Shown one piece after another: positions 1 through 63,893 of a DNA stretch of 64,000 bases. The translations under genes were made by a program, and so were the position numbers. The notes below the pieces were generated by a model, which saw nothing but the letters and a program-made list of their open reading frames with translations, did no database searches and was not told the origin of the DNA. Positions within the stretch are counted from its first letter, which is position 1; each line of letters starts with the position of its first letter. This stretch comes from Octopus sinensis (Eukaryota): NCBI RefSeq assembly GCF_006345805.1, contig NC_043010.1, positions 43,648,001 through 43,712,000 of the forward strand, given 5' to 3'.

Positions 1-3000
1 CTAGTGATCTTCGACTGCGGTAGGATGGATGCTACTTGTTGATTCTGCTTCAAGAACGTTTCCACGAAACAAAACACATCAACATTTTGAAGAGTGTTGT
101 CCGCTTTCAAGTCTTGTTCATGTTCAAAGTAGGACCTGATATTGAGCAGTCTGATCTGCAGTCCTCCGTGAGAAACTCTGGGAGCATCAGAAGGCAAAGT
201 TTCAGACAACGTTTGCTGTCGAAGCCTGTCGATTTCAAGAACAACAGATGGAATAGTGCGGATTGCACTGACATCAAATCCAAGCAAGAAGAGGCCACTC
301 AAGTGTTGGACACGACTCAAGGCAAAATACGCCTGACCAGGCATGAAGGAACCTTTTCCTTGCATGGCAACAACAATCTTATCCATGGTCTTGCCCTGGA
401 CTTTATGTATGGTGCAACCCCAGGCCAGTGAGAGAGGAAATTGCGAACGCTTTGCCTCCACAGATCGTCTACCCCTCCCGGCATAGAACTGAACATCCAG
501 TCGTTTGATGGGAACTACTCCCGGGAATGACTTCTTGTACTGGTTGTCAGCGATGGCCTGCTTACCTACCCGTTCACTGTTAAATTTGACGAGGATTGTA
601 TGGACGTCACTACCGGTGTTGTCGATCCCAACATCTGTGCCACAGATGCCATTTGCCAGACCGTCAGAGACGTCTATGTTGACAGGTATCATCACTCTAG
701 CGCTAACTGCTACAGACACTACTTCCCTGGGGCCGCCAGTGTCTGACGCCTTAGTGGAAATGGTAACATCAATAAGGCCAGTCTGGACGCCTTTCTTTTT
801 GGTCGATAGCTTTGATGTCATAAATCGGATCAAGCAGCTTGAGGTGTTCTGTGTTGTGTTCATCAATCTCTTTGTTCGTCTTAAACATGTGAAGGGTGCT
901 CACTGGGTAGTCAGTGTCTTCTTTCTTTGGCGATGACTCTGGTCTTAAGCAAGGTTATATCATCTTCCGTGCAGGTGGCTGTCCTGACCCTCATCAACAA
1001 TTGGGCAAAACGTTGATCGTCCTTTTGTCGCATGCTCTCTGTGAGTTCCATCAATTTGAAATTTTCCTCCCACAGAGATCCATGCAAACGGGTGTAGTTG
1101 TCTCTCGGGAGGCCAAAGACGTGATTCTGGCCTACAGGTTGCAGTTGGTAGAGATCCCCAACGGCCATCACACTGACTCCTCCAAATCGGGAATCTTGGT
1201 CAGAGTTCCCACAGATGTATTGGAGTCGGCGATGGATGTAGTTGAGGAAGTCAGCTCCAACGAAACGAACATGAAGCTCTGAGCGATTACCCGACACCTC
1301 TGGAGCTAGATAGACATTTCTTAATTGATCTTCCTGTGGGAGCTCCCTTTCTTGTACAACACCTTCGTTTTCTTCTTCTGCATGTTGGAACTCCACATTT
1401 GGGGCCACAGCATCCCAGGCATCCTCGGGAGGACTCATCCTTTTCAAATCGTCATAGGCTCTGTCCAGTTCATCAGCGTTAACACTGAACATGGCTTCGT
1501 TAGAATGGATAGTAGCTTCGACGCTTTCGTAGTGTTCTTGGTAGATGGATAGTCAACTTTCAAATCAATTTCTTCATCTCGCCATGGATAGTAAAGAATC
1601 AACAGGTTCCTGTATCTGCCTTCTCCTTCCTTCTTTTCTTTGTGGAACCTTATGATGCAGCGGTAGAGCGATAACTTTCGCGAGTTTGTCTGCAATTTCT
1701 TCGGTATCTGAGTTATTGCCACCACCTTCGATGTCATCACATCCGTGTAAAACATCAGAGATGTGGTCAGCTGCATCATCAGGAGCATCTTTTCCTCCAA
1801 TTGTGTAAGTGGCTGCAAATTCTGCAAAGCACATATCTTCGAGGGCATCAGGTCGCATGGCACAGCGGTCAAAGGGTGACTTACAAAAGATATCTTCATC
1901 GTCTTCGTCCATACCTTCAAGGATCTTCTGCGGCTTAAGCATGGACACACCTTTGCCTTTTGGTGCAGTGTTGATAAACACCACTTTTCGCCTGGCCCTC
2001 TTCAGTGGCAAGGAGAGGATCCTGTAAGCAGCCTCCTGAGCACTAACTTCCTTGTTGTTCAGAAAAACTGATCCTACTTTTCTCAGATTTGATTTCAAGT
2101 CTTCACCTCTGCTTTCTTCAGCTACTTTTCTCAGCAGTTCACTCATAGCCCTCTCGCTTTTCATCATGATGCACGAGTATAGGTCCATGATGAACAGCAG
2201 GTCTATGTTGGCACGCCAGGTTTTAAGGATCTTCGGACACCTGTTTCCCCGATTTCACTAGTTTCACTACACCCTGGTATTCCTGCGGGTTTACATCAGC
2301 CTTTTGCAAGAAATCTTCGAAGGAAGTATCCTCGGGAACGTCCTTGTCTTCCATGACATCGCTGACATTTTTGAAGATATCCGCTTTAGCGTTGAGCATG
2401 AGCTTTGCAACTATAAAGTTGTCTACCTCAGGCTGGTGAGCAATCACAATTTCAGAAGAGGGTTAATGAGGGAAATGGAATCTACATGATCCACCTTTCT
2501 TCGGCATGTTGTTGAGTGCACATGCTTCTGAAGAGAGAGAACGACCTGTCTCAAATCGCTCTCTTCTTCCCCTGGAATGACACGTCTGGTGCTGGTCGAT
2601 GAATGCCGCGATTTCTTCATCAATGTTCACATCAAGTTTCGGCGCATCTTTAATCTACTAGCACGCCAATGGGATGTGCCCTTCCATCCATGAACTCTTT
2701 GAAGAATATGTCCAATCTGTGTTTGAACTGTCAGGCTGCTGTAACTGGGTTGCATCTGAGCCAGTTGCACTTTTGCTCCCACGGCATTTTCCTGATGTCA
2801 TCAGCTGTCAGCTCTTTTCCATACTGATGAGCTATACTCTTGATGACTTCTGGCCACTGCATGTCAGCTGCTGACAGGGTAAGGAACCACGTGGGAATTT
2901 CAAGTTGCCGCACCATGGCAAGCAAATCTAGCAATACAGTATTCCAGTATGCAGGAGAACCTCGAATGTCCTTCATGAACTTGAAAGCGGCGTCGGTGCG

Positions 3001-6986: not shown

Positions 6987-8336
6987 TTAGTGAATAACAG
7001 CACCTGGATCAACAACATTAGTTTCTAGATCAATATCGTTTGTAATCATATTGGTAACAGTAGCTGGATCACATACATTTACCTGTAGGTTGGTGATGTT
7101 GGTATCTGAATCAGTGATGCTGGGACTAGGATTGATGATATTTGTATCAGGATCAGAGACACCAACTTCTTGATGAGTAATACTTGATTCTGATCCAGTA
7201 ACATTTTCACTTGGATCAGTTGGATTATCAACAGGATTGACGACATCAACAACTGGGACAGTGAGATTGGTCACAATGGAATCTTGATTCACATCATTGT
7301 CATTAGAAGTAGTAACAGTAACATGTGGAGCAGTGACATTAATACATGAATCAGCAACTGAGAAATTTAGGTTTTTGATTGAGTCACACGGATCAATAAC
7401 ACCTGGATGAGTAATTGAGGTGCCAAGATCAGTAACATCTGCATGAGTGACAGCAATACCTAAGTTTGTAACTGGGACACAGAGATCAGTGATTGGGAGG
7501 TTGAGGTTATTAATAACAACACCTAGATCAGTCACAGTGACACCAGAGTTCGTAATAGTGACACTTGATGCTTCACTGACTGGCACATCCAGACCAGAGA
7601 TAACAACACCAAGATTATTTACAGCAGCAGTTGAATCAATAACACCTGTTACAGCATTTGAATCCCTGACCGGAACACTTGTATTATTAATATTAGAAAC
7701 ATCTGGATCAGAGGTAGCACAGTTCATGTCATCAGTTTGAGTATCTGGGTTAGAGATAACAATTGGATTAGTATCAGAATTCTCTGCACTCACATCCATC
7801 ATTGTAACACCAGGCTGAGTGACAGTAGTAAGAGACGGTAGGTAGCTAGATGGTGAATGATTCTCTTCAAATTGGTCAGAGACAGGAACAGGATTCTCAG
7901 GAGACAGCATCCAGGAAGAGGAAGTTGAGAGAGGTTCAGTAGTTGAAAGTTTTACACCAAGTGTTGACTGAACACTTGGTGATGAAGATTTAGTATCACT
8001 GCAGCAAGTCCAAGAGAGTGTCTCATTGACAGTATCAACAGCAACGTTTGACTCACAAGTGGTTTGTACCCTTGGTGACTTAAGTTTGGACAAATGAGTG
8101 TCACAGAGTAACTTTAGTTCTTCCATCTCCAAACAGACAGCAACTGTTCGCAACTGAGTCAAGATCTGTGGGTCAACATCTAGAATACCATTATACATGT
8201 AATCAGCAAAAGCATCCAGAGCAAGCTGGCTGATCCTTTTAGGGAAATTGACCCGCAGGAATTGACTTGAAGATATATCAGCACTTGGCATGGAAAGCAG
8301 TTTGGGACACATTGCCAACAAGACCACCTTGTGAAC
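6987..8336 (-). CDS. THAP-BTB gene, last coding exon: remainder of BTB plus a long Thr/Val/Asp/Ser-rich low-complexity tail
   Basis: Acceptor ttttgttttcctag|GTTCAC (phase 0). VHKVVLLAMCPKL...ALDAFADYMYNGIL...LEMEELKLLC is a typical BTB core. Open for 1350 nt to TAA at 6987-6989. Confidence 0.92.
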   Translation of the reverse strand, partial: VHKVVLLAMCPKLLSMPSADISSSQFLRVNFPKRISQLALDAFADYMYNGILDVDPQILTQLRTVAVCLEMEELKLLCDTHLSKLKSPRVQTTCESNVAVDTVNETLSWTCCSDTKSSSPSVQSTLGVKLSTTEPLSTSSSWMLSPENPVPVSDQFEENHSPSSYLPSLTTVTQPGVTMMDVSAENSDTNPIVISNPDTQTDDMNCATSDPDVSNINNTSVPVRDSNAVTGVIDSTAAVNNLGVVISGLDVPVSEASSVTITNSGVTVTDLGVVINNLNLPITDLCVPVTNLGIAVTHADVTDLGTSITHPGVIDPCDSIKNLNFSVADSCINVTAPHVTVTTSNDNDVNQDSIVTNLTVPVVDVVNPVDNPTDPSENVTGSESSITHQEVGVSDPDTNIINPSPSITDSDTNITNLQVNVCDPATVTNMITNDIDLETNVVDPGAVIH

Positions 8337-8844
8337 CTAGGAAAACAAAAAATGAAGAAAAGTAAATATGCATATACACATGTTCTTTAGTTTGTTTTGG
8401 CCATCATGGCCAAGGCTATGCTGGCTCTAAAATGTATATGAAATAGAGAGAGAGAAAAGGGGGATGTGCATATTGCATGCATGACAGAGTTAGAAACATG
8501 CCCCAAATAATAATTTGCTATTTAATCAGGATAAAAAAAAAAACATAAAAGAAGCCTGTTGAGAACTGGAAACTACATAATAAAATTTCAAGGATTCCAA
8601 CATCTGTAGATAATACTCTGGTGCTATTTGATGAAGGTTTTGCTATTTCTAACATGTAAGCAAGTTGATACTCCCTTGTTGACTCAACTTTGTGCAACAA
8701 GATTCAAAGATGCCAGTATAATAAACCTGTATACAAACATATAATATGTAGTTCCAGATTCATTGACTTGGATGGTCATGGCTGAAATGATTTTAATCAA
8801 AGATCTCCTTGGTCTTAATGGAGCAATTGCATTTTTATAAAGCA

Positions 8845-9148
8845 CTAGCAGTATCGCCTGGCGTTGATCGGGTTTGTAAGGGAAATAACTATATAAACAT
8901 TTTTAGAGAGTTACTTCCCTTATATAAACCGAGCAAAAAATGCATTGAAAAACGAAAAAACGATGGTAAATTTTTTTTTAAATCGTAGACTCATCGTAGA
9001 CGCACACTAATACTCAGAAGGGCTCAATATGAATCACGACTATAAGATACCCCCTTTTGGTTAAACTGCACCGCAAAATGTGAGAGTAGTTAGGAATCTA
9101 AATCGGAGGAGACAGACTCTCACACAACTTCAGTTTTATATATAAAGA
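8845..9148 (-). mobile_element. Non-autonomous Helitron in the last intron of THAP-BTB
   Basis: On the minus strand: 5' TC, 3' hairpin (cccgatcaacgccagg) plus CTAG, inserted at A|T. Homologous to the 40226 copy. Confidence 0.85.
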
Positions 9149-9252
9149 TATGTGAACTGCACTCTGCAAAACCACATAAACATATCAGAGACCATCATGA
9201 ATGCAAAAATGTCATTATACTCACCACTCCAATCTTCATATTGCCAACTTAC

Positions 9253-9400
9253 CATTATTGTAGCATTCTCATTACCAATGCCAGCATCACAGAATTTGCC
9301 ATCTTTCCAAAGCAATGCAAGGTTGTGCAACATACTGCGTGGATGACTTGCAACAATGTACACCTTCTTCAGTCGTTGTGGCTGTTCATTTCTATCATCA
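9253..9400 (-). CDS. THAP-BTB gene, coding exon 5, start of the BTB domain
   Basis: Acceptor atatttgcag|T (phase 2). Translation DDRNEQPQRLKKVYIVASHPRSMLHNLALLWKDGKFCDAGIGNENATIM matches the BTB N-terminal 'H...L..L....FCD' pattern. Donor ATG|gtaagt. Confidence 0.88.
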
Positions 9401-10504
9401 CTGCAAATATTGGGTGTTTTTTCTTTAATAATATATTTATGGGTGTACAAGAATATAAGTGTGAAAAAGCAGTGTGTGCTGAATTAAATATGATTTCAAT
9501 TGCTAGGGTGCACACGCACACATGCACACACCCATACACACACACACACACCACACACACACACACACACACACCCACATACACACAGCTACTTGGTACA
9601 TCTCTTATTTCTTTAGAATTAAACAAATAAGGAAAAAAAACTCTTCCTCTAAGTAGGACACCGGTCCATCATAAGCTGAGAAGAGATAGAAATAGTGGTA
9701 ATAAGGTGACTGGGTGGGCCCTCAAGGTATGGAAAGAAGGAAACCAGGACTGTAGGTGAGTAGAGCTTGCAAGAGAGTATTAGAGAGTAAGAGATGGGGA
9801 ATGGAGAATAAGTGTTGAAGGATGGATGTAATGAATGGTGGATAAGAAGGGTCCAATGATGTAGGAAGGTAAAGAACAGCAGAATAGTAATGTCGGTATA
9901 GTAAGTAGGGGGAGTAGGAGAAGGATGAGAATGTACCAGCACACTGATGCTACTGGTACAGAAGCCAAATCCTTTGCTAGTCTTAACTCCTTACTCCAAC
10001 TTCTTTCATCCCCTACTCACATTCCAAACCAGCACCCACCCACCCCCACCAAACATTCTCAATATCATTTTTATCTCTAAGGCAGCAACCTGGCAAAAAC
10101 GTTAGCACACCAGGCGAAATGCTTAGCAGTATTTCTTCTGTCCTTACGTTCTGAGCTCAAATTCCGCCGAGGTCGACTTTGCCTTTCATCCTTTCAGAGT
10201 CAATAAATTAAGTACCAGTTGCAAACTGGGGTCGATCTCTCAGAGATAACTTCTCTCTAGATGAGGTCCTCCTCTCCTTTAAAGAATGATATAACCTCTT
10301 TGAAAACAATTTCTTCCTTTCACCCTTTAGCATTCAGATTACTCTATTAAATATAATGATCATTTCTTCATATTGTTTTGAATTAATCATGCATTATCTC
10401 ACAGCTTTGAGATGTTGAAGATATAGTTGTTTATTTTTAGAATGACATTGTAGGATAAGTGTGAGAGGCCAGATCTGATTGTTTTAAACATAAAACAGCT
10501 AGAA

Positions 10505-10740
10505 TCATCATCTTCATCATCCTTTAATGTCTGTTTTGCATGTTGGCATGGATTAGACGATTTGACCAGAGCCATTAAGACAGAGAGTTGCACAAGGTTC
10601 CAGCCTGATTTAGCTTGGTTTCTATGGCTGGATGCCCTTCCTAATGCCAACCACTTTACAGTGTGTAGTGAGTGCTTTTAATGTGGCACTGGCATGAGCA
10701 CTTTATGTGGCGCTGGTATGAGTGCTTTTAAGCAGTACTT
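10505..10740 (-). mobile_element. RTE-tail short element. Related copies lie at ~12360, 20090, 30120, 31765, 32905, 36910 and 41005.
   Basis: Shared motifs catcatc...tttaa...ccatgctggcatggg and ggctggatgcccttcctaatgccaaccac. Confidence 0.75.
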
Positions 10741-10915
10741 TTAGCCAAATATGGACAGTTTAAAGGATTAAATAATGTACCCTTCTCGAAAACAGAGCTC
10801 CTATCAAAAATAAGATTTGTTCTGTAGACAACAATCCCTCACACATTTTACACAAGATCACATTAAGCAAAAATGATTTCCATCACAATAAATGAAAAAA
10901 CATAATTCAACAAAC

Positions 10916-11289
10916 CTATTCTGAAGTTTACCAGACACTTTTTCATGTTGACTGGAAGAATCTTCTCTAGTCGTTGGTGAAATCTGAGATGTTGCACAAA
11001 TCTGCTTCCGCATCTTACAAGACTTCTCTCCTTGTAACAAATCTGAAGACATAGACAAATTTGGGGACACTGCTACAGCTAGTGATGAACTTTGTCTTGT
11101 TGATATACTGTTGCTTTCACATCCCATAGCTGACTTTTTGGCATTTAGATCTTTACAAGCAACATTATTTACAGTTGTATTATCCTTTGAAGCCAACGTA
11201 AGCTTATTGTTTGCAGCTGCTTCAGACAGGTTAGCAGTAAGTGTACTGTCTGGTACATCAAGTACTTTCTGACTAGATCCAATGGTTGT
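10916..11289 (-). CDS. THAP-BTB gene, coding exon 4, Ser/Thr-rich linker
   Basis: Acceptor tgttttcag|ACAACC (phase 0), in frame with ORF 10858..11196. Donor AATAG|gtttgt (phase 2) is the one compatible with the next exon. An alternative donor G|gtaaac lies at 10932. Confidence 0.72.
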
Positions 11290-12864
11290 CTGAAAACAAT
11301 ATAGAAAGACAACAAGGTAATGGTGTTAGTAGGAGAGGTTAGACAGGTAAAGGCAGAGGATGAAATATTGTAACTGAATAAATCAGGGGATGTTAAGTTA
11401 AGAGCAGTTAAAAGTACTTAGGAACAAGACAAGAGATGGTGAAAAAATGAAAAAGCAGAAAATGAAAAAATTGAAAAACATGAAAAAGAGTGAACAGCTG
11501 AGAATTTTAGTCAGCACATTATGAAAAGAATAACTTGTGTCCTTGGATTTTATACTGAGATGTCCTAAGATGTATCTTTTAATTGCATCCTGTAAGTTCA
11601 TCCAGGGTATATATATTCTGCAAGATTTTTCCCTGCATCAGATAAACACTTTCAACCAACTAATAATTATGGCCAGATTTTTAAACGATGCATGACTCGC
11701 CTTTGCCACAAGTAGTAACCTAACCCAAAATATTGCAGTAAACAATAATAGGGCAGGGGCAAAGAATTCAATAATAAAAACCGAGTAAAAATGGATAATG
11801 AAATTAATATTGATTTCGGATTTTGGCACAAGGCCAGCAAGTCCAGGGGAGTAGATAAGTCAATTACATCAACTCCAGTGCTCAACTGCTACTTATTTTA
11901 TTGACCCCGAAAGGATGAAAGACAAATTCAACCTTGACAGAATTTGAACTCAGAATATAATGACGGACAAACTGCTGCTAAGCATTTTGCCTGGTGTGTT
12001 AATGATTCTGCCAGCTCACCGCCTTAATGATGAAATTAATATTAATAGTAATTATATGAGAGGTGGTAATAGCAACTATGCACATATATTGAATCTAAGG
12101 GGATTATAAACAACCAATGACTAACTACGTGAGTGAAAACAATGAACCTACAGTAGAGGGTGTAAGGGAAATAACTGAACCCAGACCAGACATTTAATGT
12201 AACTCTAAGAAATATTGAATGTAGTAATACACAAAATCTAGTGTATAGTCAAACTAACAATACTAGTGGGATAACAAGTAATGATATAGACGAGATACCT
12301 AATTCTTCTGCCAGTAGCAAGCATAGGGTTAATATCATCAAACATCTTTATAGCTGAAGAGCTGCCCAGGTTCCATGTCTGTTTAGGCATGGTTTCTGTG
12401 GCTGGATGCTCTTTCTAATGCCAACCACTTTACAGAGTGTACTGGGTGCTTTATGCAGCACTGGTACGAGTGCTTTTATGTGGGACCAGCACAGGTGTTT
12501 TTTACATGGCACCAGCACCCATGAGCCTGCAAGATTAGGATTGCTCAGCTGAAGAGGGGCATAGGGACATGCCTGTATGCAAAGATAATCATGATTTCAC
12601 TTAGATTGATGTGTCTTCTCAAGCACAAGTGCTTCAACTCATAACACTGATAAAATATACCGTCTAATGATAGCTATTTAGTTAGACAGACTGAGTTGTT
12701 GAGGATTAAGTGCAATACAAGTGACACAGTGCATTTCACCTACTTTCATACCTTTTGAACTCAGACATTTCCTGCTCTAAAATATTATCTTTTATCAAGT
12801 GTCAACTACACAAATCTATTGATATAACTCCATTGTTCTGGTTGAAAGTTCAAAGTTAACATAC

Positions 12865-12960
12865 CAAAGTTTTGCCTTTCGAAACAGAAGTCGTTGATTT
12901 TGTTGCATTCTTCAACTGCTGTTTTTCCCGCCGGCGTTGACCACTAACACTCACCTTTTT
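12865..12960 (-). CDS. THAP-BTB gene, coding exon 3 (KKVSVSGQRRREKQQLKNATKSTTSVSKGKTL), basic linker or NLS-like segment
   Basis: Acceptor ttttttgcag, 96 nt open in phase 0/0, donor TTG|gtatgt. A basic stretch directly after the THAP domain is typical. Confidence 0.8.
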
Positions 12961-15701
12961 CTGCAAAAAATAAATGACAACATAAGAATAATTAGCAATG
13001 TTTTAGATTGACTTATGAGGAAGTTGCTGTGTAATCTAAATAAAGTGTTGACCATATGTTATGAGATTAAGTAGTCATTGATCTGCAAAATTAGAATGGT
13101 TTAGCTGGCTTCTTTTATGAAGGCTCAACATGATATGTTTCAAACAATTGTCTTAACTATAATCCAGCTTTACATCATGTTCCTTGTTAAGCAGCTAAAG
13201 TTTTTTTGTTTGTTTGTTTGTTTGTTTGTTGTTTTTTCTTTTTTGGGGTTGTTTTTTTTTCATGGTTTAGTCAGAAGAGAAAAGTGAATATCCTTGATTT
13301 ATGTAGGACCTCTGGCATTGGTAAAAGAAAAAGAAGAAACCATAGTTCATCTGTTGTTGCAGTAGATATCATATTATTTATCTTCAAGCTAAGGACTTAG
13401 CTCAAATGCTTGCAACAGTGAGTTTCACTAAAGGTATCCAAGAATCAGCTGGGGTGTTACACTGGATAATGCATCACTTAGAATTTATATCCAAACGAGC
13501 GGAGAGAAGATGGCAGCAATAATTCATTTAAGGTTGTATTTCAATCTAGGTTCTGCTTATTTTATTGAAAACTAATAGAAATAAAAATACTTTAAGACAT
13601 GTCGTAATGGTGGTGGTGGTAATAGAACAATGCTCTGTTGTTCATAACAGTGCTATATGTTTATTAGAACTGTGTTGGGTAGGTGGTGAGCTGGCAGAAA
13701 CATTAGCACGCCGGGCGAAATGCTTAGCAGTATTTCGTCTGCCACTACATTCTGAGTTCAAATGCCACCGAGATCAACTTTGCCTTTCATCCTTTCGGGG
13801 TCAATTAAATAAGTACCAATTACGCAATGGAGTCGATATAATTGACTTGATCCGTTTGTCTGTCCTTGGTTGTTCCCTCTGTGTGTAGCTCCTTGCGGGC
13901 AGTAAAAGATAAGTACTGTGTTGGGTAGAACAAACTTGATGCCCAGAGTAAAACAGTAATACAACTTAAACCCAAACACAAATAGCCTAAATATTTTCAT
14001 GCAACCAAAGATCTTTACCACTAACACTCAAGTAATGTATAAAACCAATGAAAAAACTTCTACATGGTCCCTCAACTTGCAAGAATTTCCCTTACATCAC
14101 ACCCTACCATCTTCTTAAAAAGAAAGAATGCACTAAATAATGCAGTCTTAGACCTATTCTACAAAAGCAACAAGATGCCTTTGACTGACCAGGACAAAAA
14201 ACAACACTGGTGTATATAATTCCCAAGATTTTTCTACTCTTGTATATTTATGCTATTAAAAGTGACTTTAATAATTTTTGATGTTCTATGGTGTTATTGG
14301 TAGGTGTTACATAGAGTATGTTTGTTCAAGGCCAGATTTCAATGTGATCTATATTGTATTGGAATAGTTGTACTGCTTAATATGGAGAATAGTAGAATGA
14401 GATAACTGTGGTGTTTTCTGCATATGAATCTATGTGCATTTTATAACAGTATGTTAAAACACATTGTGCCTGAAAAAAGAGAGAATAATTAGTTAGAAAA
14501 CCATGAGTTCCTGTAGTATAAAGGACAAAAATTCTCTTACCTTACACTCTGGGAACAACTTCAAATGAACTCTTCAATTGCTAACTTGAATTTGCAATGC
14601 AACTCAAAGATCCTCACTACCCCAACGCACCAGCCAGAAGCTGGAATATGCAGAGACTCCAGCTGCATGTTAATTCCATCCCAGCCTGTATGATATAATA
14701 TATACTTGTTCAGCTCCCAAAAATCCAGACTTTATTTTTCATTGACAGAACCACTGCCATCATTGGCAACACACTGCTCTTTACCTCCTCTTTCCAACAC
14801 ATCAAGATACGTTCTACAATCCATCTGTTCCCCTTCTCTCTCAAACTTTCTCTGGCCTTTTTTTTCAATATATGCTCATAGCTGACCTTATTTCTCAATG
14901 TCAGGGATCTTCCCTTCCAGAACCATTTTGGTGCCCATCACTTGCCAGCAAACTCAATCTGGAAATAATAACTTCGATTCTATCAATGGCATTCCTTTCT
15001 TTAGAGTTCAATCCATCGATCCCACAGCCATAATTTTCCACTGCATGTTCAGGTGAACTCAGCAATTGAAAGTTAAGTATTTTGGTCATGGACACAATGC
15101 AAACCTTCCAGCATGTTGGCTGAACTATCCAATACCTCACTGATTCAGCTAATTGTTCTCTCTATGAAATATGTATCATAGTAATTATTTATAAGTAAGG
15201 TAACCAAAATGAATAAATAATCTATCTTGTTACTCATCTGATTGACATGAAATGACTCACAGACATGAGTCAACCTTTGACCTACAGGTGAACTGTCTCC
15301 TCTCCGCCTTTTCTATCACTACCATAATGGCCTCTGTTCTTCAAACTTGACTAGCTTTGTACCTCCATCAGATACTCCCAACCAAATCATCTTTCCACTT
15401 CATCAAACTTGTGTCCAGCTCCCATCCTAAGCCCTGCACAAACCACTATGCTTAGCCTTCTTCCTCAGAATACCATTCTTCTGAAATATCCACCCTGCTT
15501 ATGTCTTTCCTTCAGGTGTCAACTTGCAACACTTTAAACAGCATATTATTGGCATCAATCTCACTAGTATTGCAAAACCTATTAAGGCCATCAAAACAGA
15601 TACTTCTAGACCCAGGAGTAAAAGGGAAAAAAGCATGATATAATCACTGTAGTTGACTATATTCTTGTACAAATAATAAAAATATACAAACACTCCCTTA
15701 C

Positions 15702-15903
15702 TTTCATATGTGGTGGAAAATCAAAGATCGATGGAACAGCACCATCTCTAAGACGTGTTGTTTGTCCAGTACGGTCAAAACATTCTTCTGTAAAATGCTC
15801 ACTACACAGATATGTTTTATGCTCTGGTACCCAAATTTTACCATTCACTTGGTACTTGAGGGCATATGCCCACTCTTTTCTTCGTTTCAAATCCTTAGGA
15901 AAA
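15702..15903 (-). CDS. THAP-BTB gene, coding exon 2, C-terminal half of the THAP domain
   Basis: Acceptor tttgtag|T (phase 2 gives TG|T = Cys, FHCFPKD). Translation is FPKDLKRRKEW...YLCSEHF...RLRDGAVPSIFDFPPHMK, with THAP invariant P, W, CxxH-F and the AVPxIF box. Donor AAA|gtaagg (phase 0). Confidence 0.93.
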
Positions 15904-16257
15904 CTACAAATAGAGAAAGTAGTTGTCAAATGTTAGAAAAACTGAAGAAAAGGAAGGCAAATGAACAAGAGCCTCTTATATGAATCAAAGATAAGAAATA
16001 CATTAAGGGAGATAACTTGTACTAGGAGGGAATAGGAACAAACCACTAAGTAAACACGTGAAACTAGACAGTCAAGTTAAAATAAAAAGCAAGTAAGTAG
16101 CGAGAGAGACAAAAGGATTAAATATAAACCTTCAAGCAACTAAAAATAGCTGAAAGATATTATTAATCACATGTTTAGAGATCAGAACATTTTCAATAAT
16201 TAAATCTATACTACAATCAGTCAGATCATCAATCATCATTGGATGCCTTATTACTGG

Positions 16258-16660
16258 ATACTCTTTTACTTGTTTCAGCCATTTGACTGCGGCCATGCTG
16301 GAGCACCGCCTTTAGTCGAGCAAATCGACCCCATGACTTATTCTTTGTAAGCCTAGTACTTATTCTATCGGTCTCTTTTGCCGAACTGCTAAGTTACAGG
16401 GATGTAAACACACCAGCATCGGTTGTCAAGTGATGTTGGGGGGGGACAAACACAGACACATAAACATATACACACACATACATATATATATACATATATA
16501 CGACGGGCTTCTTTCAGTTTCCATCTACCAAATCCACTTACAAAGCTTTGGTCTGCCCGAAGCTATAGTAGAAGACACTTGCCCAAAGTGCCACGCAGTG
16601 GGACTGAACCCGGAACCATGTGGTTGGTAGGCAAGCTACTTACCACACAGCCACTCCTGT
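16258..16660 (-). mobile_element. tRNA-derived SINE family B, full length. Others: 42497-42870(+), 56950-57345(+), a split copy at 51588/53065, and partial copies at ~21590, 22475, 25215 and 32108.
   Basis: Head ggagtggctgtgtggtaagtagcttgc...ggttccgggttcagtccc with A and B boxes, internal (TA)/(TG) microsatellite, and tail gactgaaacaagtaaaagag. Confidence 0.92.
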
Positions 16661-16867
16661 GCCTTTATACAAATTGATCTCAACTAGAATCCTCTATTTC
16701 ATAATTGATAGTAAAAACGTTCTTAACCAGTAGTTCACAGATGTTTGTACACTAGTTATAAAATAAAGATTATCTACGTCAGTTTAGAAATAAAAATTAC
16801 TAGTTCAAATTCAATTTGATATTATTTCCTAATCCAGATGTAAGAAACTTGATCATGAGTGGAGATC

Positions 16868-17119
16868 ATTATCAGGTATCTTGTTTTTGGCAGTGTGGGG
16901 GTAACTATTAAAAATAATTTTTCATATAGTATTATCAGGTATCTTGTTTTTGGCAGTGTGGGGGTAACTATTAAAAATAATTTTTCATATAGTATTATCA
17001 GGTATCTTGTTTTTGGCAGTGTGGGGGTAACTATTAAAAATAATTTTTCATATAGTATTATCAGGTATCTTGTTTTTGGCAGTGTGGGGGTAACTATTAA
17101 AAATAATTTTTCATATAGT
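16868..17119. repeat. Perfect 63-bp minisatellite, 4 copies, intronic
   Basis: Unit attatcaggtatcttgtttttggcagtgtgggggtaactattaaaaataatttttcatatagt is repeated four times with no differences I can see. Confidence 0.97.
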
Positions 17120-17328
17120 CTAAAAATTTAATCCTAACAATTCATCTCATACATTTAGACATTGAGTGGTAAGTGTTAATAAAAACTACCCAAGTATAAA
17201 AATACTTGCTGAAACAATTCCTGTAGAAATTAAAAATTGGGAAATCAAGCAACCAATGCTACAATGGAATAATTTAAAATTAGCATAAACTGTATGAAAA
17301 CAAAATGAATATTCCAAAGCATACTGAC

Positions 17329-17408
17329 CAGTGAAATGTGATGCCTTGCTCACGTGCTTTTCGGTCACTACGATGTGTACATTTATATGCTGCACAGGAT
17401 GTTGGCAT
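17329..17408 (-). CDS. THAP-BTB gene, coding exon 1 (MPTSCAAYKCTHRSDRKAREQGITFH), N-terminal half of the THAP zinc finger
   Basis: Acceptor tttgcag at 17449-17450 (exon starts 17448), ATG at 17408, donor TG|gtcagt (phase 2). Contains the CxxxxC motif typical of a THAP N-terminus. Confidence 0.9.
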
Positions 17409-25459: not shown

Positions 25460-27510
25460 TCATCATCATCATCATCATCATTTAACGTCCGCTTTCCATG
25501 CTAGCATGGGTTGGACGGTTCAACTGGGGTCTGGGGAGCCCGAAAGCTGCACCAGTCCAGTCAGATCTGGCAGTGTTTCTACAGCTGGATGCCCTTCCTA
25601 ACGCCAACCACTCCGAGAGTGTAGTGGGTGATTTTATGTGCCACCGACACAGGTGCCAGACGAGGCTGGCAAACGGCCACGCTCGGATGGTGTTTTTTAT
25701 GTGCCACCGACACAGGTGCCAGACGAGGCTGGCAGACGGCCACGCTCGGATGGTGTTTTTATGTGCCACCGACACAGGTGCCAGATGAGGCTGGCAAACG
25801 GCCACGATCGGATGGTGCTTGTTACATGCCCACAGCACGGAGGCCAGTCGATGCGGTACTGGCTACGGCCACGTTCGGATGGTTTTCTTGTGTGCCACGT
25901 GCCACCGGCACTGGTACCACAAAGATACAAATTCCATTGATGTTCATCTATTTTGATTTGTTTTGATTTTCACTTGCCTCAACAGGTCTTCACAAGTGTC
26001 ACAAGAAGGAAGGTATGCACAGGTGGACTGACTACGTCCCAGGTAGGGGCCATGGGTTATGGCCTGACTAGTCTTGCCGGGTCTTCGGATGGTGTTTTTA
26101 TGTGCCACCGACACAGGTGCTAGATGAGGCTGGCGAACGGCCACGATCGGATGGTGTTTGTCATGTGCCCACCGCACTGACTACAGCACTGATGGATTTC
26201 TTGTGTGCCACAGGCACTGGTACCACAAGATACAAATTCCATTGATGTTCATCTATTTTGTCTATTTTGATTTGATTTGATTTGATTTTCACTTGCCTCA
26301 ACCGGTCTTCACAAGTGTCGCAAGAAGGAAGATATGCACAGGTGGACTGACTAGTCTTGCCGGGTCTTCGGAAGGTGTTTTTATGTGCCACCGACACAGG
26401 TGCCAGATGAGGCTGGCGAACGGCCATGATCGGATGGTGTTTGTTACGTGCCCACAGCACGGAGGCCGGTCGATGCGGAACTGGCTACGGCCACGTTCGG
26501 ATGGTTCTCTTGTGTGCCACCGGCACTGGTACCACAAAGTGTGTGCCACCGGCACTGGTACCACAAAGATACAGATTCCATTGATGTTCATCTATTTTGA
26601 TTTGTTTTGATTTTGATTTGGATTTTCACTTGCCTCAACAGGTCTTCACAAGTGTCACAAGAAGGAAGGTATGCACAGGTGGACTGACTACGTCCCAGGT
26701 AGGGGCCATGGGTTATGGCCTGACTAGTCTTGCCGGGTCTTTGGATGGTGTTTTTATGTGCCACCGAGACAGGTGCTAGATGAGGCTGGCGAACGGCCAC
26801 GATCGGATGGTGTTTGTCATGTGCCCACAGCACGGAGGCCAGTAGATGCGGTACTGGCTACGGCCACTTTCGGATGGTTTTCTCTTGTGTGCCACCGGCA
26901 CTGGTACCACAAAGATACAAATTCCATTCATGTTCATCTATTTTGATTTGTTTTGATTTGATTTTGATTTTGATTTTCACTTGCCTCAACAGGCCTTCAC
27001 AAGTATCACAAGGAGGAAGGTATGCACTGGTGGACTGACTACGTCCCAGGTAGGGGCCATGGTTTATGGCCTGACTAGTCTTGCCGGGTCTTCGGATGGT
27101 GTTTTTATGTGCCACCGACACAGGTGCTAGATGAGGCTGGCGAACGGCCACGACCGGATGGTGTTTGTTATGTGCCCACAGCACGATGGCCAGTGATGCG
27201 GTACTGACTACGGCCATGTTCGGATGGATTCTTGTGTGCCACCGGCACTGGTACCACAAGCGGTACTGACTACTTTTTATGTGCCACCGACACAGGTGCT
27301 AGATGAGGCTGGCGAACGGCCACGACCGGATGGTGTTTGTTATGTGCCCACAGCACGATGGCCAGTGATGCGGTACTGACTACGGCCACGTTTGGATGGA
27401 TTCTTGTGTGCCACCGGCACTGGTACCACAAGCGGTACTGACTACGGCCACGTTCGGATGGATTCTTGTGTTCCACCGGCACTGGTACTACAAAGATACA
27501 AATTCCATAT
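25460..27510 (-). repeat. RTE-LINE 3' tail with a nested higher-order tandem array: ~58-60 bp subunits inside ~300-350 bp units
   Basis: Starts with the (CAT)n RTE tail. The subunit tttatgtgccaccgacacaggtgc(c/t)aga(c/t)gaggctggc recurs many times. The marker gatacaaattccatt recurs at ~25925, 26229, 26569, 26915 and 27497. Confidence 0.92.
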
Positions 27511-27511
27511 T

Positions 27512-27544
<33 letters not shown>

Positions 27545-27546
<2 letters not shown>

Positions 27547-28630
27547 CATCATCGTTTAAACATCCACTTTCCATGCTGGCATGGGTTGGACGGTTTGACT
27601 GAGAACTGGTGAGCCAGAAGGCTGCACCAGGCTCAATCTGATCTGGCAAAGTTTCTACAGCTGGATGCCCTTCCTAACACCAACCACTCCAAGAATGTAA
27701 TGGGTGCTTTTACATGCCACCTGCATAAGGGCCAGTCAGGCAGTTCTGGCAACAACCATGCTCAAAAAGTGTTTTTTACATGCTACCTGCACGGGAGCCA
27801 GTCCAGCGGCACTGGCAACGAACATGCTCGAATATTGTTTTTCATGTGCCACTGGCACATATGCTGATAAGGCAACGCTGGCAACAATCACACTCGAATG
27901 GTACTTTTTACATGCCACCAACACGGGAGCCAATCCGTGGCCCTGGCAACGATCACGCTTGGATGTGCTTTTAACATTCCACTGGCATGAGTGCCATTCA
28001 GGCAGTATTGTCATTGGCCATGTCAGCAATTTTGATCTGATTTCACTTGCTTCAATAGGTCTTCGCAAGCAAAGTTTATTGTCCATTGAATGAGGGGTAC
28101 TCATAAGTGGGCTGGTTACACCCACTGGCATAGGCCACAGGCTATGGTCTCACTTGGCTTGCCGGGTCTTCTCAAGCACAACATATCTCCAAAGGTCTCA
28201 GTCACCTGTCATTGCCTCGGTAAGTCCCAACGTTCGAAGGTCATGCTTCACCACCTCATCCCAGGTTTTCCTGGGTCTACCTCTTCCACAGGTTACCTCA
28301 ACTACTAGGGTGTGACACCTTCTCACACAGCTGTTCTCATTCCTTCGCAACACATGACCATACCAATGCAGTTGTCTCTCTTGTATACCACATCTGATAC
28401 TTCTTAAATCCAACTTTTCTCTCAGGACACTTACACTCTGTTGTGTATACACACTGACATTACACATCCAGGGGAGCATACTGGCTTCATTCCTTGCAAG
28501 CTTACGCATGTCCTCAGCAGTCACGATCCATGTTCCACTGCCATGTAGCATTGCTGTTCGTACACATGCGTCATACAGTCTGCCTTTTACTCTAAATAGA
28601 GGCCTTTTGTCACCAGCAGAGGTAGGAGCT
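27545..28630 (-). mobile_element. RTE-clade LINE, 3' fragment (RT C-terminus plus 3' UTR and (GAT)n tail)
   Basis: ORF 28198..28707 contains VKGRLYDACVRTAMLHGS...RQLHWYGHVLRR...GRGRPRKTWDEVVKHDLRTLGL, the typical RTE C-terminus. The shared tail is catcatcgtttaa...ccatgctggcatgggttgg. Confidence 0.9.
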
Positions 28631-29227
28631 CTCTGAACTTTGCCCAGGTTATTCTTATTCTTTTTGTACACTGTATACACACTACTGTGTCCCTGCCAAG
28701 TTTGCAACTGCTATTTCCCCCTTCATCCAGACAACAGGGGTCCTCCCTCAAGCCACTTCCTATTGATACCTTTTCCTCATTCTACCATTGACTACTTCCT
28801 CACCCAAGTTTGTATCTTCACCCCTTATCATCCAATCACTCTCCTATCTACTGGATTATTCTGCTGTTGTAAGAAATGAAAGCAGATCCTGTTGCTACAT
28901 ACACCATATTGATTTCAAATTTTGGTACAAGACCAGCAACTTTGAGGGAAGAGGTAGGTCGATTACATCAACCCCAGTGTTCAACTGGTACTTACTTTAT
29001 CAACCCCGAAAGGATAAAAGGCTAAGTCGACCTCTGCAGAATTTGAACTCAGAACATAAAGACAGATAAAATGCCACTAAAGAATTTGCCCACACAGGCT
29101 GATTCTGCCAGTTTGTCGCCTTATATATCATGCCATATGGACATTATTGTACTGCTAGTTACCACTTCCTCTCTTCTATGTTACTCACAGTTTACATTCA
29201 TCCCTCACTCTTATCATCCCCCACTCA

Positions 29228-29575
29228 TTTACCATCCCCGAACGTGGCCGTTGCCAGTGCCACCCCGACTGGCTTCTGTGCCGGTGGCTCGTAAAAAGCA
29301 CCAACCCATCGTGGCCGTTGCCAGCCTCCGTGCCGGTGGCATGTAAAAAGCACCATCCAATTGTGGCCGTTTGCCAGCCTCATCTGGCTCCTGTGCCGGT
29401 GGCACGTAAAAAGCACCCACTACACTCATGGAGTTAGGAAGGGCATCCAGCCGTAGAAACATTGCCAGATCAGACTGGGCCTGTTGCAGCCTTCTGGCTT
29501 CCCAGACCCCAGTTGCACCGTCCAACCCATGCCAGCATGGAAAGCGGATGCTAAACGATGATGATGATGATGACT
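29228..29575 (+). mobile_element. RTE-family 3' UTR fragment with internal short repeats
   Basis: Reverse-complement match to the 25460 and 27545 elements. Ends in aacccatgccagcatggaaagcggatgctaaacgatgatgatgat. Confidence 0.85.
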
Positions 29576-62612: not shown

Positions 62613-63893
62613 CGAGGGGCGTTCAATAAGTAATGCCCCTGACCCACTTCCCATAGCAGTAGAGCAACGAAACTTGGCACAGTTATTAGTCTTTTTCTAC
62701 ATAGGAACCACCCAGGGTTACGTATTTCTCCCATTGTTTGATGCAGCTCTGAAGACCGTTTTTGTAGAAGACCCCAGCTTGGTCCTCCAACCACGACATG
62801 ACTTCAGAAATCAAGGCTGCATCATCTGGGAAACGCCTTCCTTTCAAAAACAACTTCATGGCTGGGAAGAGGTGAAAATCAGAGGGTGCAGGTCAGGAGA
62901 GTAGGGGGGATGAGTTCATAGCCGCACACCTGTGCTTCTGATCTGGCGACACGCGAGTTGTTGATCGGAGCGTTGTCCTGCAGGAGAATGCCTTTGCTGA
63001 TCTTGCCCCGCCTCTTGATTTTGATAGCTTCTCTTAATTTCCTCAAAAGTGAAGCATAATAGACTCCTGTAATTGTGACACCCTTTGCCAGGAAATCTGT
63101 CATCACTACTCCGTCCTGGTCCCAGAAGACTGTGAGCATGACCTTGCCAGCGGAGGGCTGCACCCTTGCCTTCTTTGGAGGGGGTGAGTCACGGTGCTTC
63201 CACTGCATTGACTGGGCTTTGGTCTCTGGATCATAGTGATGGACCCAGGTTTCATCCTGTGTAATCAGTCTTTTGAAAAATTTTGACTCATCTTCTTGGC
63301 ACATCTTCAAATTCATCCTCGCTCAATCGACACGTTCTTGCTTCTGGAAAGGTGTGAGCAACCTGGGAATCCATCTGGCAGACACCTTTTGCATATGCAA
63401 ATGGTCATGAATGATAGTTTCCACAGATCCGGTACTAATCTTGACCTCATGGGCTATTTGGCGAATAGTTATGCGTCAATCTTCCAAAATGGCAGCCTCA
63501 ACTTGACGAACAGATGCCTCATCAATGGCAGAAGGGGGCGACCAGATTTGGGAGCTGTTTCCACAAAGTTCCGACCATGTTTGAATTTACGATGCCAGCG
63601 TTTTACAAGGTCATATGATGGGGCATCATCACCATAAGTTACTTTTATTTCATCAAAAGTCTCCCGTGGTGTGCGTCCTTTCAAATACAAAAACCGCATC
63701 ACTGCTCGACACTCAACAGGCTCCGTTTCACACTTGACTCAGTTCAAACACCTGTAAATCAGAAACCACAATTAGTTCAGAGCTGTAATTTGCCACTTAA
63801 TCTATAGCGATATAAATAATTGCACATGCAAAATTTCAGCTAGATCAAACAACTGCAAGTGGGTCAGAGGCATTACTTATTGAACGCCCCTCG
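62613..63893 (-). mobile_element. Full-length irritans-like mariner, frameshifted
   Basis: TA-flanked 37-bp TIRs (cgaggggcgttcaataagtaatgccYctgacccactt, 1 mismatch). Motifs WIPRLLT, LITQDETWVHHYDPE, QDNAP and PDLAPSDF. Confidence 0.95.

What the first reader, a model, noticed from the sequence alone, without database searches (positions are those of the whole stretch)
6987..17408. Single gene joining a THAP zinc finger to a BTB/POZ domain (749 aa)
Seen: six exons (80+202+96+374+148+1350 = 2250 nt) with GT/AG sites whose phases match at all five junctions. They give a complete C2CH THAP finger (C5, C10, CSEH, AVPSIF), a linker, a BTB domain and a low-complexity tail. Established: THAP is a P-element-transposase-like DNA-binding domain. 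BTB transcription factors normally carry BTB at the N-terminus followed by C2H2, BED/FLYWCH or Kelch modules. I know of no characterised THAP-then-BTB family. Inference: this may be a lineage-specific DNA-binding protein that oligomerises or recruits co-repressors or Cullin3 via BTB, possibly from a domesticated THAP fused to a BTB gene.
Basis: partly seen in the sequence, partly recalled or inferred. Interest (0 to 1): 0.8.

Follow-up and report, generated by a model that had tools for sequence, protein, structure and literature searches.

The report
Octopus THAP–BTB gene, real but annotated
The six exons form a real octopus gene whose protein joins a THAP zinc finger to a BTB pairing domain, but it is already in public annotation and is one ordinary member of a cephalopod family of BTB regulators with swapped DNA-binding heads.

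Summary
The six minus-strand exons (80+202+96+374+148+1350 nt) translate to 749 aa. This is 100% identical to Octopus sinensis XP_029645012.1, "uncharacterized protein LOC115219085 isoform X2". Pfam finds THAP (aa 5-87, E 8e-17) and BTB (aa 281-384, E 2e-8).

The same architecture is annotated for the orthologs in O. bimaculoides, O. vulgaris and Argonauta hians. In Argonauta the gene spans only 6.1 kb and keeps the same intron positions and phases.

The THAP exons have the intron layout of a vertebrate THAP2-like gene. They therefore come from an old cellular THAP gene, not a fresh P element.

The BTB belongs to a subfamily whose named members are all cephalopods. O. sinensis has at least 23 such exons. 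Different members carry THAP, FLYWCH, CENP-B-type, DUF3504, FAR1-like or STPR heads. A second THAP-BTB paralog with the same exon layout lies on another chromosome piece.

A 2023 paper already noted that octopus THAP genes mostly carry BTB.

Spliced THAP-BTB mRNA contigs do exist for a cuttlefish relative.

Most likely function: a nuclear DNA-binding factor that dimerises through BTB. Interest is modest.

The parts
17329..17408 (-). Coding exon 1 (80 nt). ATG at 17408. First 26 codons plus 2 nt of the THAP finger, including C5 and C10. Donor GTCAGT.
   Evidence: The intron falls after 'FH' plus 2 nt, as in Argonauta, the C24 paralog and a stingray THAP2-like gene.
15702..15903 (-). Coding exon 2 (202 nt). 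Rest of the THAP domain (C60, H63, AVPSIF). Ends in phase 0. Donor GTAAGG.
   Evidence: Pfam THAP on this exon alone: E 7.7e-12.
12865..12960 (-). Coding exon 3 (96 nt, 32 aa). Basic stretch (KKK...RRR), a possible nuclear localisation signal (inference). Conserved in Argonauta.
   Evidence: In Argonauta it is fused with exon 4 into one exon whose acceptor sits at the same position.
10916..11289 (-). Coding exon 4 (374 nt). Fast-evolving linker with no domain. Weak donor GTTTGT.
   Evidence: Both splice sites are conserved in a second Octopus species. The donor position and phase are conserved in Argonauta. dN/dS is about 1.5.
9253..9400 (-). Coding exon 5 (148 nt). N-terminal strand and helix and the first part of BTB. 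Isoform X1 adds 36 nt upstream (to 9436).
   Evidence: The intron after 'ATIM' is shared with all paralogs.
6987..8336 (-). Coding exon 6 (1350 nt including the stop at 6987-6989). Rest of BTB (8336-8085), then a 365-aa tail rich in Asp, Asn, Val, Thr and Ser.
   Evidence: dN/dS is 0.14 for the BTB part and 0.32 for the tail.
7467..7547 (-). Conserved island in the tail (aa 564-590), nearly identical in Octopus and Argonauta while the rest of the tail has diverged.
   Evidence: alignment. Its function is unknown.

Best explanation
This is one real protein-coding gene, Octopus sinensis LOC115219085. It encodes a nuclear DNA-binding factor. The N-terminal C2CH THAP finger, closest to vertebrate THAP2/THAP1, reads DNA. 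A fast-evolving linker follows it. The BTB domain, with its N-terminal strand and helix, pairs two chains, so the protein would bind DNA as a dimer. It may also pair with paralogs. A long acidic low-complexity tail with one conserved island probably recruits partners. Vertebrate THAP1/2 dimerise through a coiled coil; here BTB would take that role. The gene arose by exon shuffling. The first two exons of an old THAP1/2-type cellular gene were joined to the linker+BTB body of a BTB family whose known members are all cephalopods. That family has repeatedly taken on different, mostly transposase-type, DNA-binding heads. Shown: exon structure, domains, orthologs, paralogs, intron conservation, and purifying selection on BTB. 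Inferred: DNA binding, dimerisation in vivo, nuclear location, regulatory role.
For: The six-exon model is identical to XP_029645012.1. THAP and BTB both score above the Pfam cut-offs. Orthologs with both domains are annotated in O. bimaculoides, O. vulgaris and Argonauta hians. The Argonauta locus spans 6.1 kb, with e1 = 80 nt, e2 = 202 nt, the same phases, and the e4 donor at the same codon position. The linker length differs from Argonauta by 36 nt, a multiple of three. A second paralog on C24 has the same THAP exon breaks and the same BTB exon pair within 13 kb. The THAP is closest to human THAP2 (E 2e-21). Its intron 1 position and phase are identical to those of a stingray THAP2-like gene, and intron 2 lies within one codon, also in phase 0. 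BTB dN/dS is 0.14 and tail dN/dS is 0.32 against another Octopus species. The BTB homodimer model scored ipSAE 0.79 against a best control of 0.00. The mark was reached by 21 of 30 solved homodimers and 0 of 23 solved single chains; the runs agree in at least 94% of contacts; pLDDT is 81. The pass may be from memory, because BTB dimers have been solved. In a cuttlefish relative, 2.5-kb contigs from several runs of three accession series encode THAP+BTB. They align to the genome in 7 blocks over 46 kb, so they are spliced mRNA.
Against: The e4 donor GTTTGT is weak. Exon 4 evolves as if unconstrained at the amino-acid level (dN/dS about 1.5). The Logan contigs of a related Octopus over e4 and e6 are unspliced, most likely genomic DNA. 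DNA binding, dimerisation and nuclear location are inferred from family knowledge and a model, not measured.
Confidence: 0.85

Rival explanations
1. Two neighbouring genes were wrongly merged by gene predictors: a THAP gene (exons 1-4) and a BTB gene (exons 5-6).
For: No reads could be laid. The e4 donor is weak. The linker exon shows no amino-acid constraint. Annotated isoform X1 implies a non-canonical AA acceptor at the e4/e5 junction.
Against: Exon 5 starts in phase 2 and so needs an upstream coding exon. The same collinear layout and phases are kept in Argonauta within 6.1 kb and in the C24 paralog. Four annotations of four species give the same protein. Every family member has a long N-terminal part before BTB. 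Cuttlefish mRNA contigs join THAP and BTB.
Confidence: 0.06
2. The BTB domain mainly recruits Cullin3. The protein would then be a DNA-tethered ubiquitin-ligase adaptor rather than a dimeric transcription factor.
For: The nearest solved BTB sequences include Cullin3 adaptors: IVNS1ABP, KLHL3, KLHL26 and gigaxonin.
Against: Transcription-factor BTBs (PATZ1, ZBTB17/BCL6) score about as well. Pfam finds no BACK domain after BTB. By eye, the loop that carries a hydrophobic-x-Glu Cullin3 contact in KLHL/SPOP reads I-S-S here (my reading, not a test).
Confidence: 0.1
3. It is a recently domesticated or still mobile P-element-type transposase remnant fused to BTB.
For: THAP is the P-element transposase DNA-binding domain. 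Some of the best THAP matches in fish also carry P-element transposase domains.
Against: Pfam finds no transposase domain. The THAP intron positions match a vertebrate cellular THAP2-like gene. The gene is conserved as a single-copy locus across octopods. The own genome holds only one other close THAP exon.
Confidence: 0.02

Closest known systems
Vertebrate THAP2 / THAP1 (cellular C2CH THAP zinc-finger factors)
   Same: The THAP domain aligns over its full length (E 2e-21 to human THAP2). It is about 50-56% identical to fish and shark THAP2/6-like proteins. The split into two THAP exons matches a stingray THAP2-like gene: intron 1 is at the identical position and phase, and intron 2 is in phase 0 within one codon. 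The logic is also shared: a DNA-binding head plus a dimerising module.
   Different: There is no HCFC1-binding motif ([DE]HxY absent). There is no third exon of the THAP2 type. A BTB domain and a long tail stand where, from memory, THAP1/2 carry a coiled coil.
Cephalopod paralogs: O. sinensis LOC115209932 / O. bimaculoides LOC106877732 and the C3 tandem clusters
   Same: The BTB is 55-60% identical. BTB is split by an intron at the same place. There is a long terminal exon with a low-complexity tail, and a DNA-binding head lies N-terminal to BTB.
   Different: That locus has many alternative head exons. Its THAP head lies in a single exon and is only about 34% identical. The window's gene has one head, made of two THAP2-type exons, and lies alone on C14.
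Drosophila BTB factors with transposase-type DNA-binding domains: mod(mdg4) (BTB+FLYWCH), Pipsqueak (BTB+HTH_psq), lola
   Same: A BTB oligomerisation module is combined with a transposon-related DNA-binding domain.
   Different: The order is reversed: here the head is N-terminal and BTB is internal. The head is THAP. This gene has no variable 3' exons. (The fly facts are from memory.)
Vertebrate ZBTB/POK proteins (PATZ1, ZBTB17, BCL6) and the KCTD1 long isoform (Crypton-derived DUF3504 in front of BTB)
   Same: The BTB is dimeric, with an N-terminal strand and helix. KCTD1 is a vertebrate precedent for a transposon-derived module placed in front of a BTB (from memory and earlier finding s1-105882).
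   Different: There are no C2H2 fingers. In ZBTB proteins BTB is N-terminal. KCTD1 has a T1-type BTB and no THAP.

Membership tests
THAP domain (Pfam PF05485) | Score above the Pfam gathering cut-off over the whole model | tested here: met
   62.3 bits against a cut-off of 23.9; model positions 1-87 of 87; aa 5-87
THAP domain (Pfam PF05485) | C2CH zinc ligands with spacing C-X2-4-C-X35-53-C-X2-H, plus the conserved P, W, F and AVPTIF box | tested here: met
   C5-X4-C10-X49-C60-X2-H63, P29, W38, F64 and AVPSIF all align with THAP2 and THAP1 structures
BTB/POZ domain (Pfam PF00651) | Score above the Pfam gathering cut-off | tested here: met
   35.1 bits against a cut-off of 20.5; model positions 4-108 of 110; aa 281-384
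BTB/POZ domain (Pfam PF00651) | Self-association through the N-terminal strand/helix interface | tested here: inconclusive
   The homodimer model scored ipSAE 0.79 against a best control of 0.00. The interface uses aa 262-281 and 350-355. This is a model only, and may be memory of solved BTB dimers.
THAP1/2/3-type cellular THAP genes | THAP split over two exons, with intron 1 after 'FH' plus 2 nt and intron 2 in phase 0 just after the domain | tested here: met
   Octopus exons are 80 + 202 nt; stingray THAP2-like exons are 71 + 193 nt. Intron 1 is at the same position and phase. Intron 2 is in phase 0 within one codon.
THAP1/2/3-type cellular THAP genes | HCFC1-binding motif [DE]HxY, followed by a coiled coil | tested here: not met
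   No [DE]HxY anywhere in the protein. The coiled coil was not tested. The stingray protein has EHSY.
ZBTB / POK transcription factors | N-terminal BTB followed by C-terminal C2H2 zinc fingers | tested here: not met
   No C2H2 family in Pfam. BTB lies 280 aa from the N-terminus, behind the DNA-binding domain.
Cullin3 adaptors of BTB-BACK-Kelch or MATH-BTB type | BACK/3-box after BTB, plus a substrate-binding Kelch or MATH domain | tested here: not met
   Pfam finds only THAP and BTB.
P-element / THAP9 transposase | Transposase catalytic domains (Tnp_P_element and relatives) after THAP | tested here: not met
   Absent from the protein although present in some fish THAP relatives.
Cephalopod head-plus-BTB family | N-terminal DNA-binding head, linker, BTB split by an intron after '...IM', and a long terminal exon with a low-complexity tail | tested here: met
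   The intron position is shared with all paralogs. BTB identity is 38-60%. With its orthologs it forms its own well-supported branch in the BTB tree (99/95). Every named relative is a cephalopod.
Variable-head complex locus (mod(mdg4)/lola-like) | Several alternative exons encoding different DNA-binding domains spliced to one constant BTB body | tested here: not met
   Only two annotated isoforms, both with the THAP head. 247 family and THAP proteins hit nothing else in the 64-kb window. Four of the long minus-strand ORFs upstream have no Pfam DNA-binding domain.

The most novel reading that the evidence does not exclude
This gene and its C24 paralog may descend from one exon-shuffling event. 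In that event the first two exons of an ancient THAP1/2-type gene replaced the head of a cephalopod BTB-body gene, so that BTB took over the dimerising role of the THAP coiled coil. It would then be one branch of a head-swapping system of transcription factors. Named members of that system are known so far only from cephalopods. Its extreme form is an array at least 180 kb long of alternative head exons in front of one BTB body. Such a system could have supplied regulatory novelty in cephalopods.
Probability: 0.5. Interest if true: 0.5.

Novelty: new member of a known kind. Interest (0 to 1): 0.3.

Why it matters
On its own it matters little. It is an annotated, uncharacterised gene whose domain pair has been catalogued before. 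Its value is as a clean single-head case of how cephalopods build regulators: an old cellular THAP head is joined to a BTB body of a family so far seen only in cephalopods. The intron evidence separates exon shuffling between host genes from direct transposase capture. It would be a convenient member for first biochemical tests of the family: DNA motif, dimer or heterodimer formation, and partners of the conserved tail island.

Tried and rejected
Later calls stopped at 9470 or started at 9600. Local scripts used the whole window only as a BLAST subject.
2. The look-up of sequencing runs listed no run on record as RNA. The 'RNA?' labels are guesses.
3. Logan contigs L001-L004 (over e6) and L023-L026 (over e4) come from another Octopus. 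They are collinear with the genome including the introns, so they say nothing about splicing.
4. A word search with aa 1-330 looked for partial transcripts linking THAP to BTB. It found only THAP-only proteins of fishes and sharks.
5. The exhaustive search lists only its best 150 hits. Taxon names were obtained for about 20 clusters and all named ones are cephalopods. THAP+BTB outside cephalopods at low similarity is therefore not excluded.
6. The protein-atlas search gave no usable hit.
7. Literature searches for 'THAP-BTB' style phrases gave nothing, and the search on 'host-transposase fusion' gave only noise.
8. The BTB tree leaves the deep branches unresolved. It cannot show whether the THAP-bearing members form one group.
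9. No tandem repeat at the DNA level explains the low-complexity tail.
Full report
**Observation**

The gene lies on the minus strand. I read each proposed exon with its flanks and rebuilt the model by script.
- e1 17408-17329 (80 nt, ATG at 17408, donor GTCAGT)
- e2 15903-15702 (202 nt, donor GTAAGG)
- e3 12960-12865 (96 nt; among 96-nt open AG...GT candidates in the intron it has the only strong polypyrimidine acceptor)
- e4 11289-10916 (374 nt, weak donor GTTTGT)
- e5 9400-9253 (148 nt)
- e6 8336-6987 (1350 nt including the stop)

The sum is 2250 nt, giving 749 aa and one terminal stop.

**Identity**

A word search with exon 6 found a 749-aa protein carrying Pfam THAP and BTB. The cluster look-up and a pairwise comparison show that the window's model is 100% identical to XP_029645012.1, "uncharacterized protein LOC115219085 isoform X2" of Octopus sinensis. 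The window is G000:C14:43648001-43712000.

Pfam on the full protein gives THAP at aa 5-87 (E 7.8e-17, 62.3 bits, cut-off 23.9). It gives BTB at aa 281-384 (E 1.6e-8, 35.1 bits, cut-off 20.5), and nothing else.

Isoform X1 (761 aa) differs only by 12 residues at the e4/e5 junction. These correspond to 36 nt upstream of the e5 acceptor, and the dinucleotide in front of them is AA, which is not canonical.

**Is it one gene?**

The indirect evidence is strong.
1. Four annotations give the same architecture: O. sinensis, O. bimaculoides (XP_014778534.1, also UniProt A0A0L8GSG9, 748 aa, 96% identical), O. vulgaris (CAI9733027.1) and Argonauta hians (1010 aa).
2. The Argonauta genomic locus (L027) is compact, at 6.1 kb.
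   - It has e1 = 80 nt ending after 'FH' plus 2 nt, and e2 = 202 nt ending in phase 0.
   - One fused exon (434 nt) stands in place of e3+e4 (470 nt). The difference is 36 nt, a multiple of three.
   - Its donor sits at the same codon position as the weak octopus donor (AAT GG|GTAATG against AAT AG|GTTTGT).
   - The e5 and e6 boundaries are the same.
3. A genomic contig of another Octopus species keeps exon 4 open, without indels, and keeps both of its splice sites.
4. Exon 5 begins in phase 2 and so needs an upstream coding exon.
5. A paralog on C24 repeats the layout within 13 kb on one strand: a THAP exon 1 ending after 'FH' plus 2 nt, a THAP exon 2 ending in phase 0, then the BTB exon pair.
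6. In a cuttlefish relative, Logan contigs of about 2.5 kb from several runs of three accession series encode a 777-aa THAP+BTB protein. They align to the Acanthosepion pharaonis genome in seven blocks over 46 kb, so they are spliced mRNA.

Two points weigh against.
- Exon 4 shows no amino-acid constraint: dN 0.103, dS 0.068, ratio about 1.5. The ratio is 0.14 for the BTB part and 0.32 for the tail.
- The contigs of the other Octopus over e4 and e6 are unspliced, most likely genomic DNA.

I put the single-gene reading at about 0.9.

**The THAP head**

It is closest to human THAP2 (E 2.1e-21) and THAP1 among solved structures, and all zinc ligands and signature residues align. The best full-database matches are fish and shark 'THAP2/6/1/3-like' proteins at 49-56% identity.

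I mapped one of them, a stingray THAP2-like protein, onto its genome.
- Its exon 1 has 71 coding nt and ends after 'FH' plus 2 nt.
- Its exon 2 has 193 nt and ends in phase 0 just after 'PPHIQK'.
- The octopus gene has the same intron 1 position and phase. Its intron 2 is also in phase 0 and lies within one codon.

The head is therefore the first two exons of an old cellular THAP gene, not a newly captured transposase.

The other THAP heads in the family have different origins or histories. The head of the C3 locus lies in one exon and is about 34% identical. The cuttlefish one is about 30% identical and is split elsewhere.

The HCFC1-binding motif typical of THAP proteins is absent.

**The BTB body and its family**

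The nearest solved BTB sequences are a mix of Cullin3 adaptors (IVNS1ABP, KLHL3) and transcription factors (PATZ1, ZBTB17/BCL6). All are weak, with E 2e-6 or worse.

A homodimer model of aa 255-400 passed the control test. ipSAE was 0.79 against a best control of 0.00. The mark was reached by 21 of 30 solved homodimers and 0 of 23 solved single chains. The runs agree in at least 94% of contacts, and pLDDT is 81. The interface is formed by the N-terminal strand and helix and by aa 350-355. Because BTB dimers have been solved, the pass may be from memory.

The O. sinensis genome holds at least 23 exons of this BTB subtype. Thirteen are in tandem at C3:139.54-139.74 Mb and at least five at C3:141.88-141.98 Mb. 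Singletons lie on C14 (this gene), C23, C24, C2 and C16.

Family members carry different heads before BTB: THAP, FLYWCH, CENP-B_N plus HTH_Tnp_Tc5, Brinker-type, DUF3504, FAR1/ZSWIM3-like or STPR.

Every relative that carries a source name is a cephalopod: Octopus, Argonauta or Acanthosepion. In the exhaustive search, all ten other two-stretch hits I scanned with Pfam, except the cuttlefish family member, were proteins with two or more THAP domains and no BTB.

In a BTB tree this gene and its orthologs form a supported branch of their own (99/95). The deep order of branches is unresolved.

**Literature and earlier notes**

[quoted passage not shown] It treats BTB as a transposon source. No paper in the library uses a THAP-BTB phrase.

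Earlier notes of this scan on other windows of the same genome describe the same family. They reach the same view: real, annotated, and heads swapped in front of a BTB body. They are not independent evidence.

**Mechanism and verdict**

The best reading is a nuclear, sequence-specific DNA-binding factor that works as a BTB-mediated dimer. Its tail evolves fast apart from one conserved island (aa 564-590), which may recruit partners.

A Cullin3-adaptor role is possible but unsupported, because Pfam finds no BACK domain. A merged-gene artefact is unlikely, and an active transposase is excluded.

The finding is correct but ordinary. It is a new, uncharacterised member of a known kind, BTB regulators with transposon-type DNA-binding domains. 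It has the less usual head-first order, and it is already in public annotation.

Noticed in passing
Outside the window: G000:C3:139,741,494-139,922,160, minus strand (O. sinensis LOC115209932; ortholog O. bimaculoides LOC106877732): There is an array of single-exon head cassettes upstream of one BTB body, all on one strand over at least 180 kb. The cassettes are an unknown head (139,743,996), DUF3504-like (139,745,439), CENP-B type (139,752,782), another unknown head (139,757,932), DUF3504-like (139,786,947), DUF3504 (139,799,834), THAP (139,910,794), FLYWCH (139,920,469) and CENP-B type (139,921,675). The annotated O. bimaculoides isoforms share an identical C-terminal body of 534 or 596 aa. 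The layout is a mirror image of fly mod(mdg4)/lola. Earlier notes of this scan describe such loci.
   Followed up: partly
Outside the window: G000:C24:13,912,281-13,930,117, plus strand (loci L029, L031, L030): A second THAP-BTB paralog has the same THAP exon breaks as the window's gene. Its exon 1 ends after 'FH' plus 2 nt with donor GTGAGT, and its exon 2 ends in phase 0 with donor GTAAGA. It has the same BTB exon pair. The THAP exon is 43-47% identical and the BTB about 55% identical. I did not match it to an annotated protein.
   Followed up: partly
window 9401-9436, minus strand: Annotated isoform X1 adds 12 residues at the e4/e5 junction. The implied acceptor dinucleotide is AA, not AG. 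It may be a real non-canonical site or an artefact of the annotation.
   Followed up: partly
window 16868-17119: A perfect four-copy tandem repeat of a 63-nt unit (100% matches) lies in intron 1 of the gene. In the plus strand it creates an open frame with a repeated 21-aa peptide.
   Followed up: no
window 25627-29381: This is a G+C-rich block (0.46-0.50 against about 0.36 around it). It is made of diverged repeats of about 62 nt, plus higher-order units of 172 and 351 nt. Open frames on both strands have no Pfam match. It is probably a repeat family of the octopus genome.
   Followed up: no
window 914-1492 (minus) and 62879-63316 (minus): These are transposon remnants. The first is a PIF1-like helicase fragment (E 1.7e-7, Helitron-like). 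The second is a mariner-type Transposase_1 DDE fragment (E 2.8e-25).
   Followed up: no
   Followed up: no
window 10916-11289 against locus L023: Between two Octopus species the linker exon 4 has dN 0.103 and dS 0.068 (ratio about 1.5). Its nucleotide identity (91%) is close to that of the flanking introns (88-89%). The frame nevertheless stays open, and the length difference from Argonauta is a multiple of three.
   Followed up: yes
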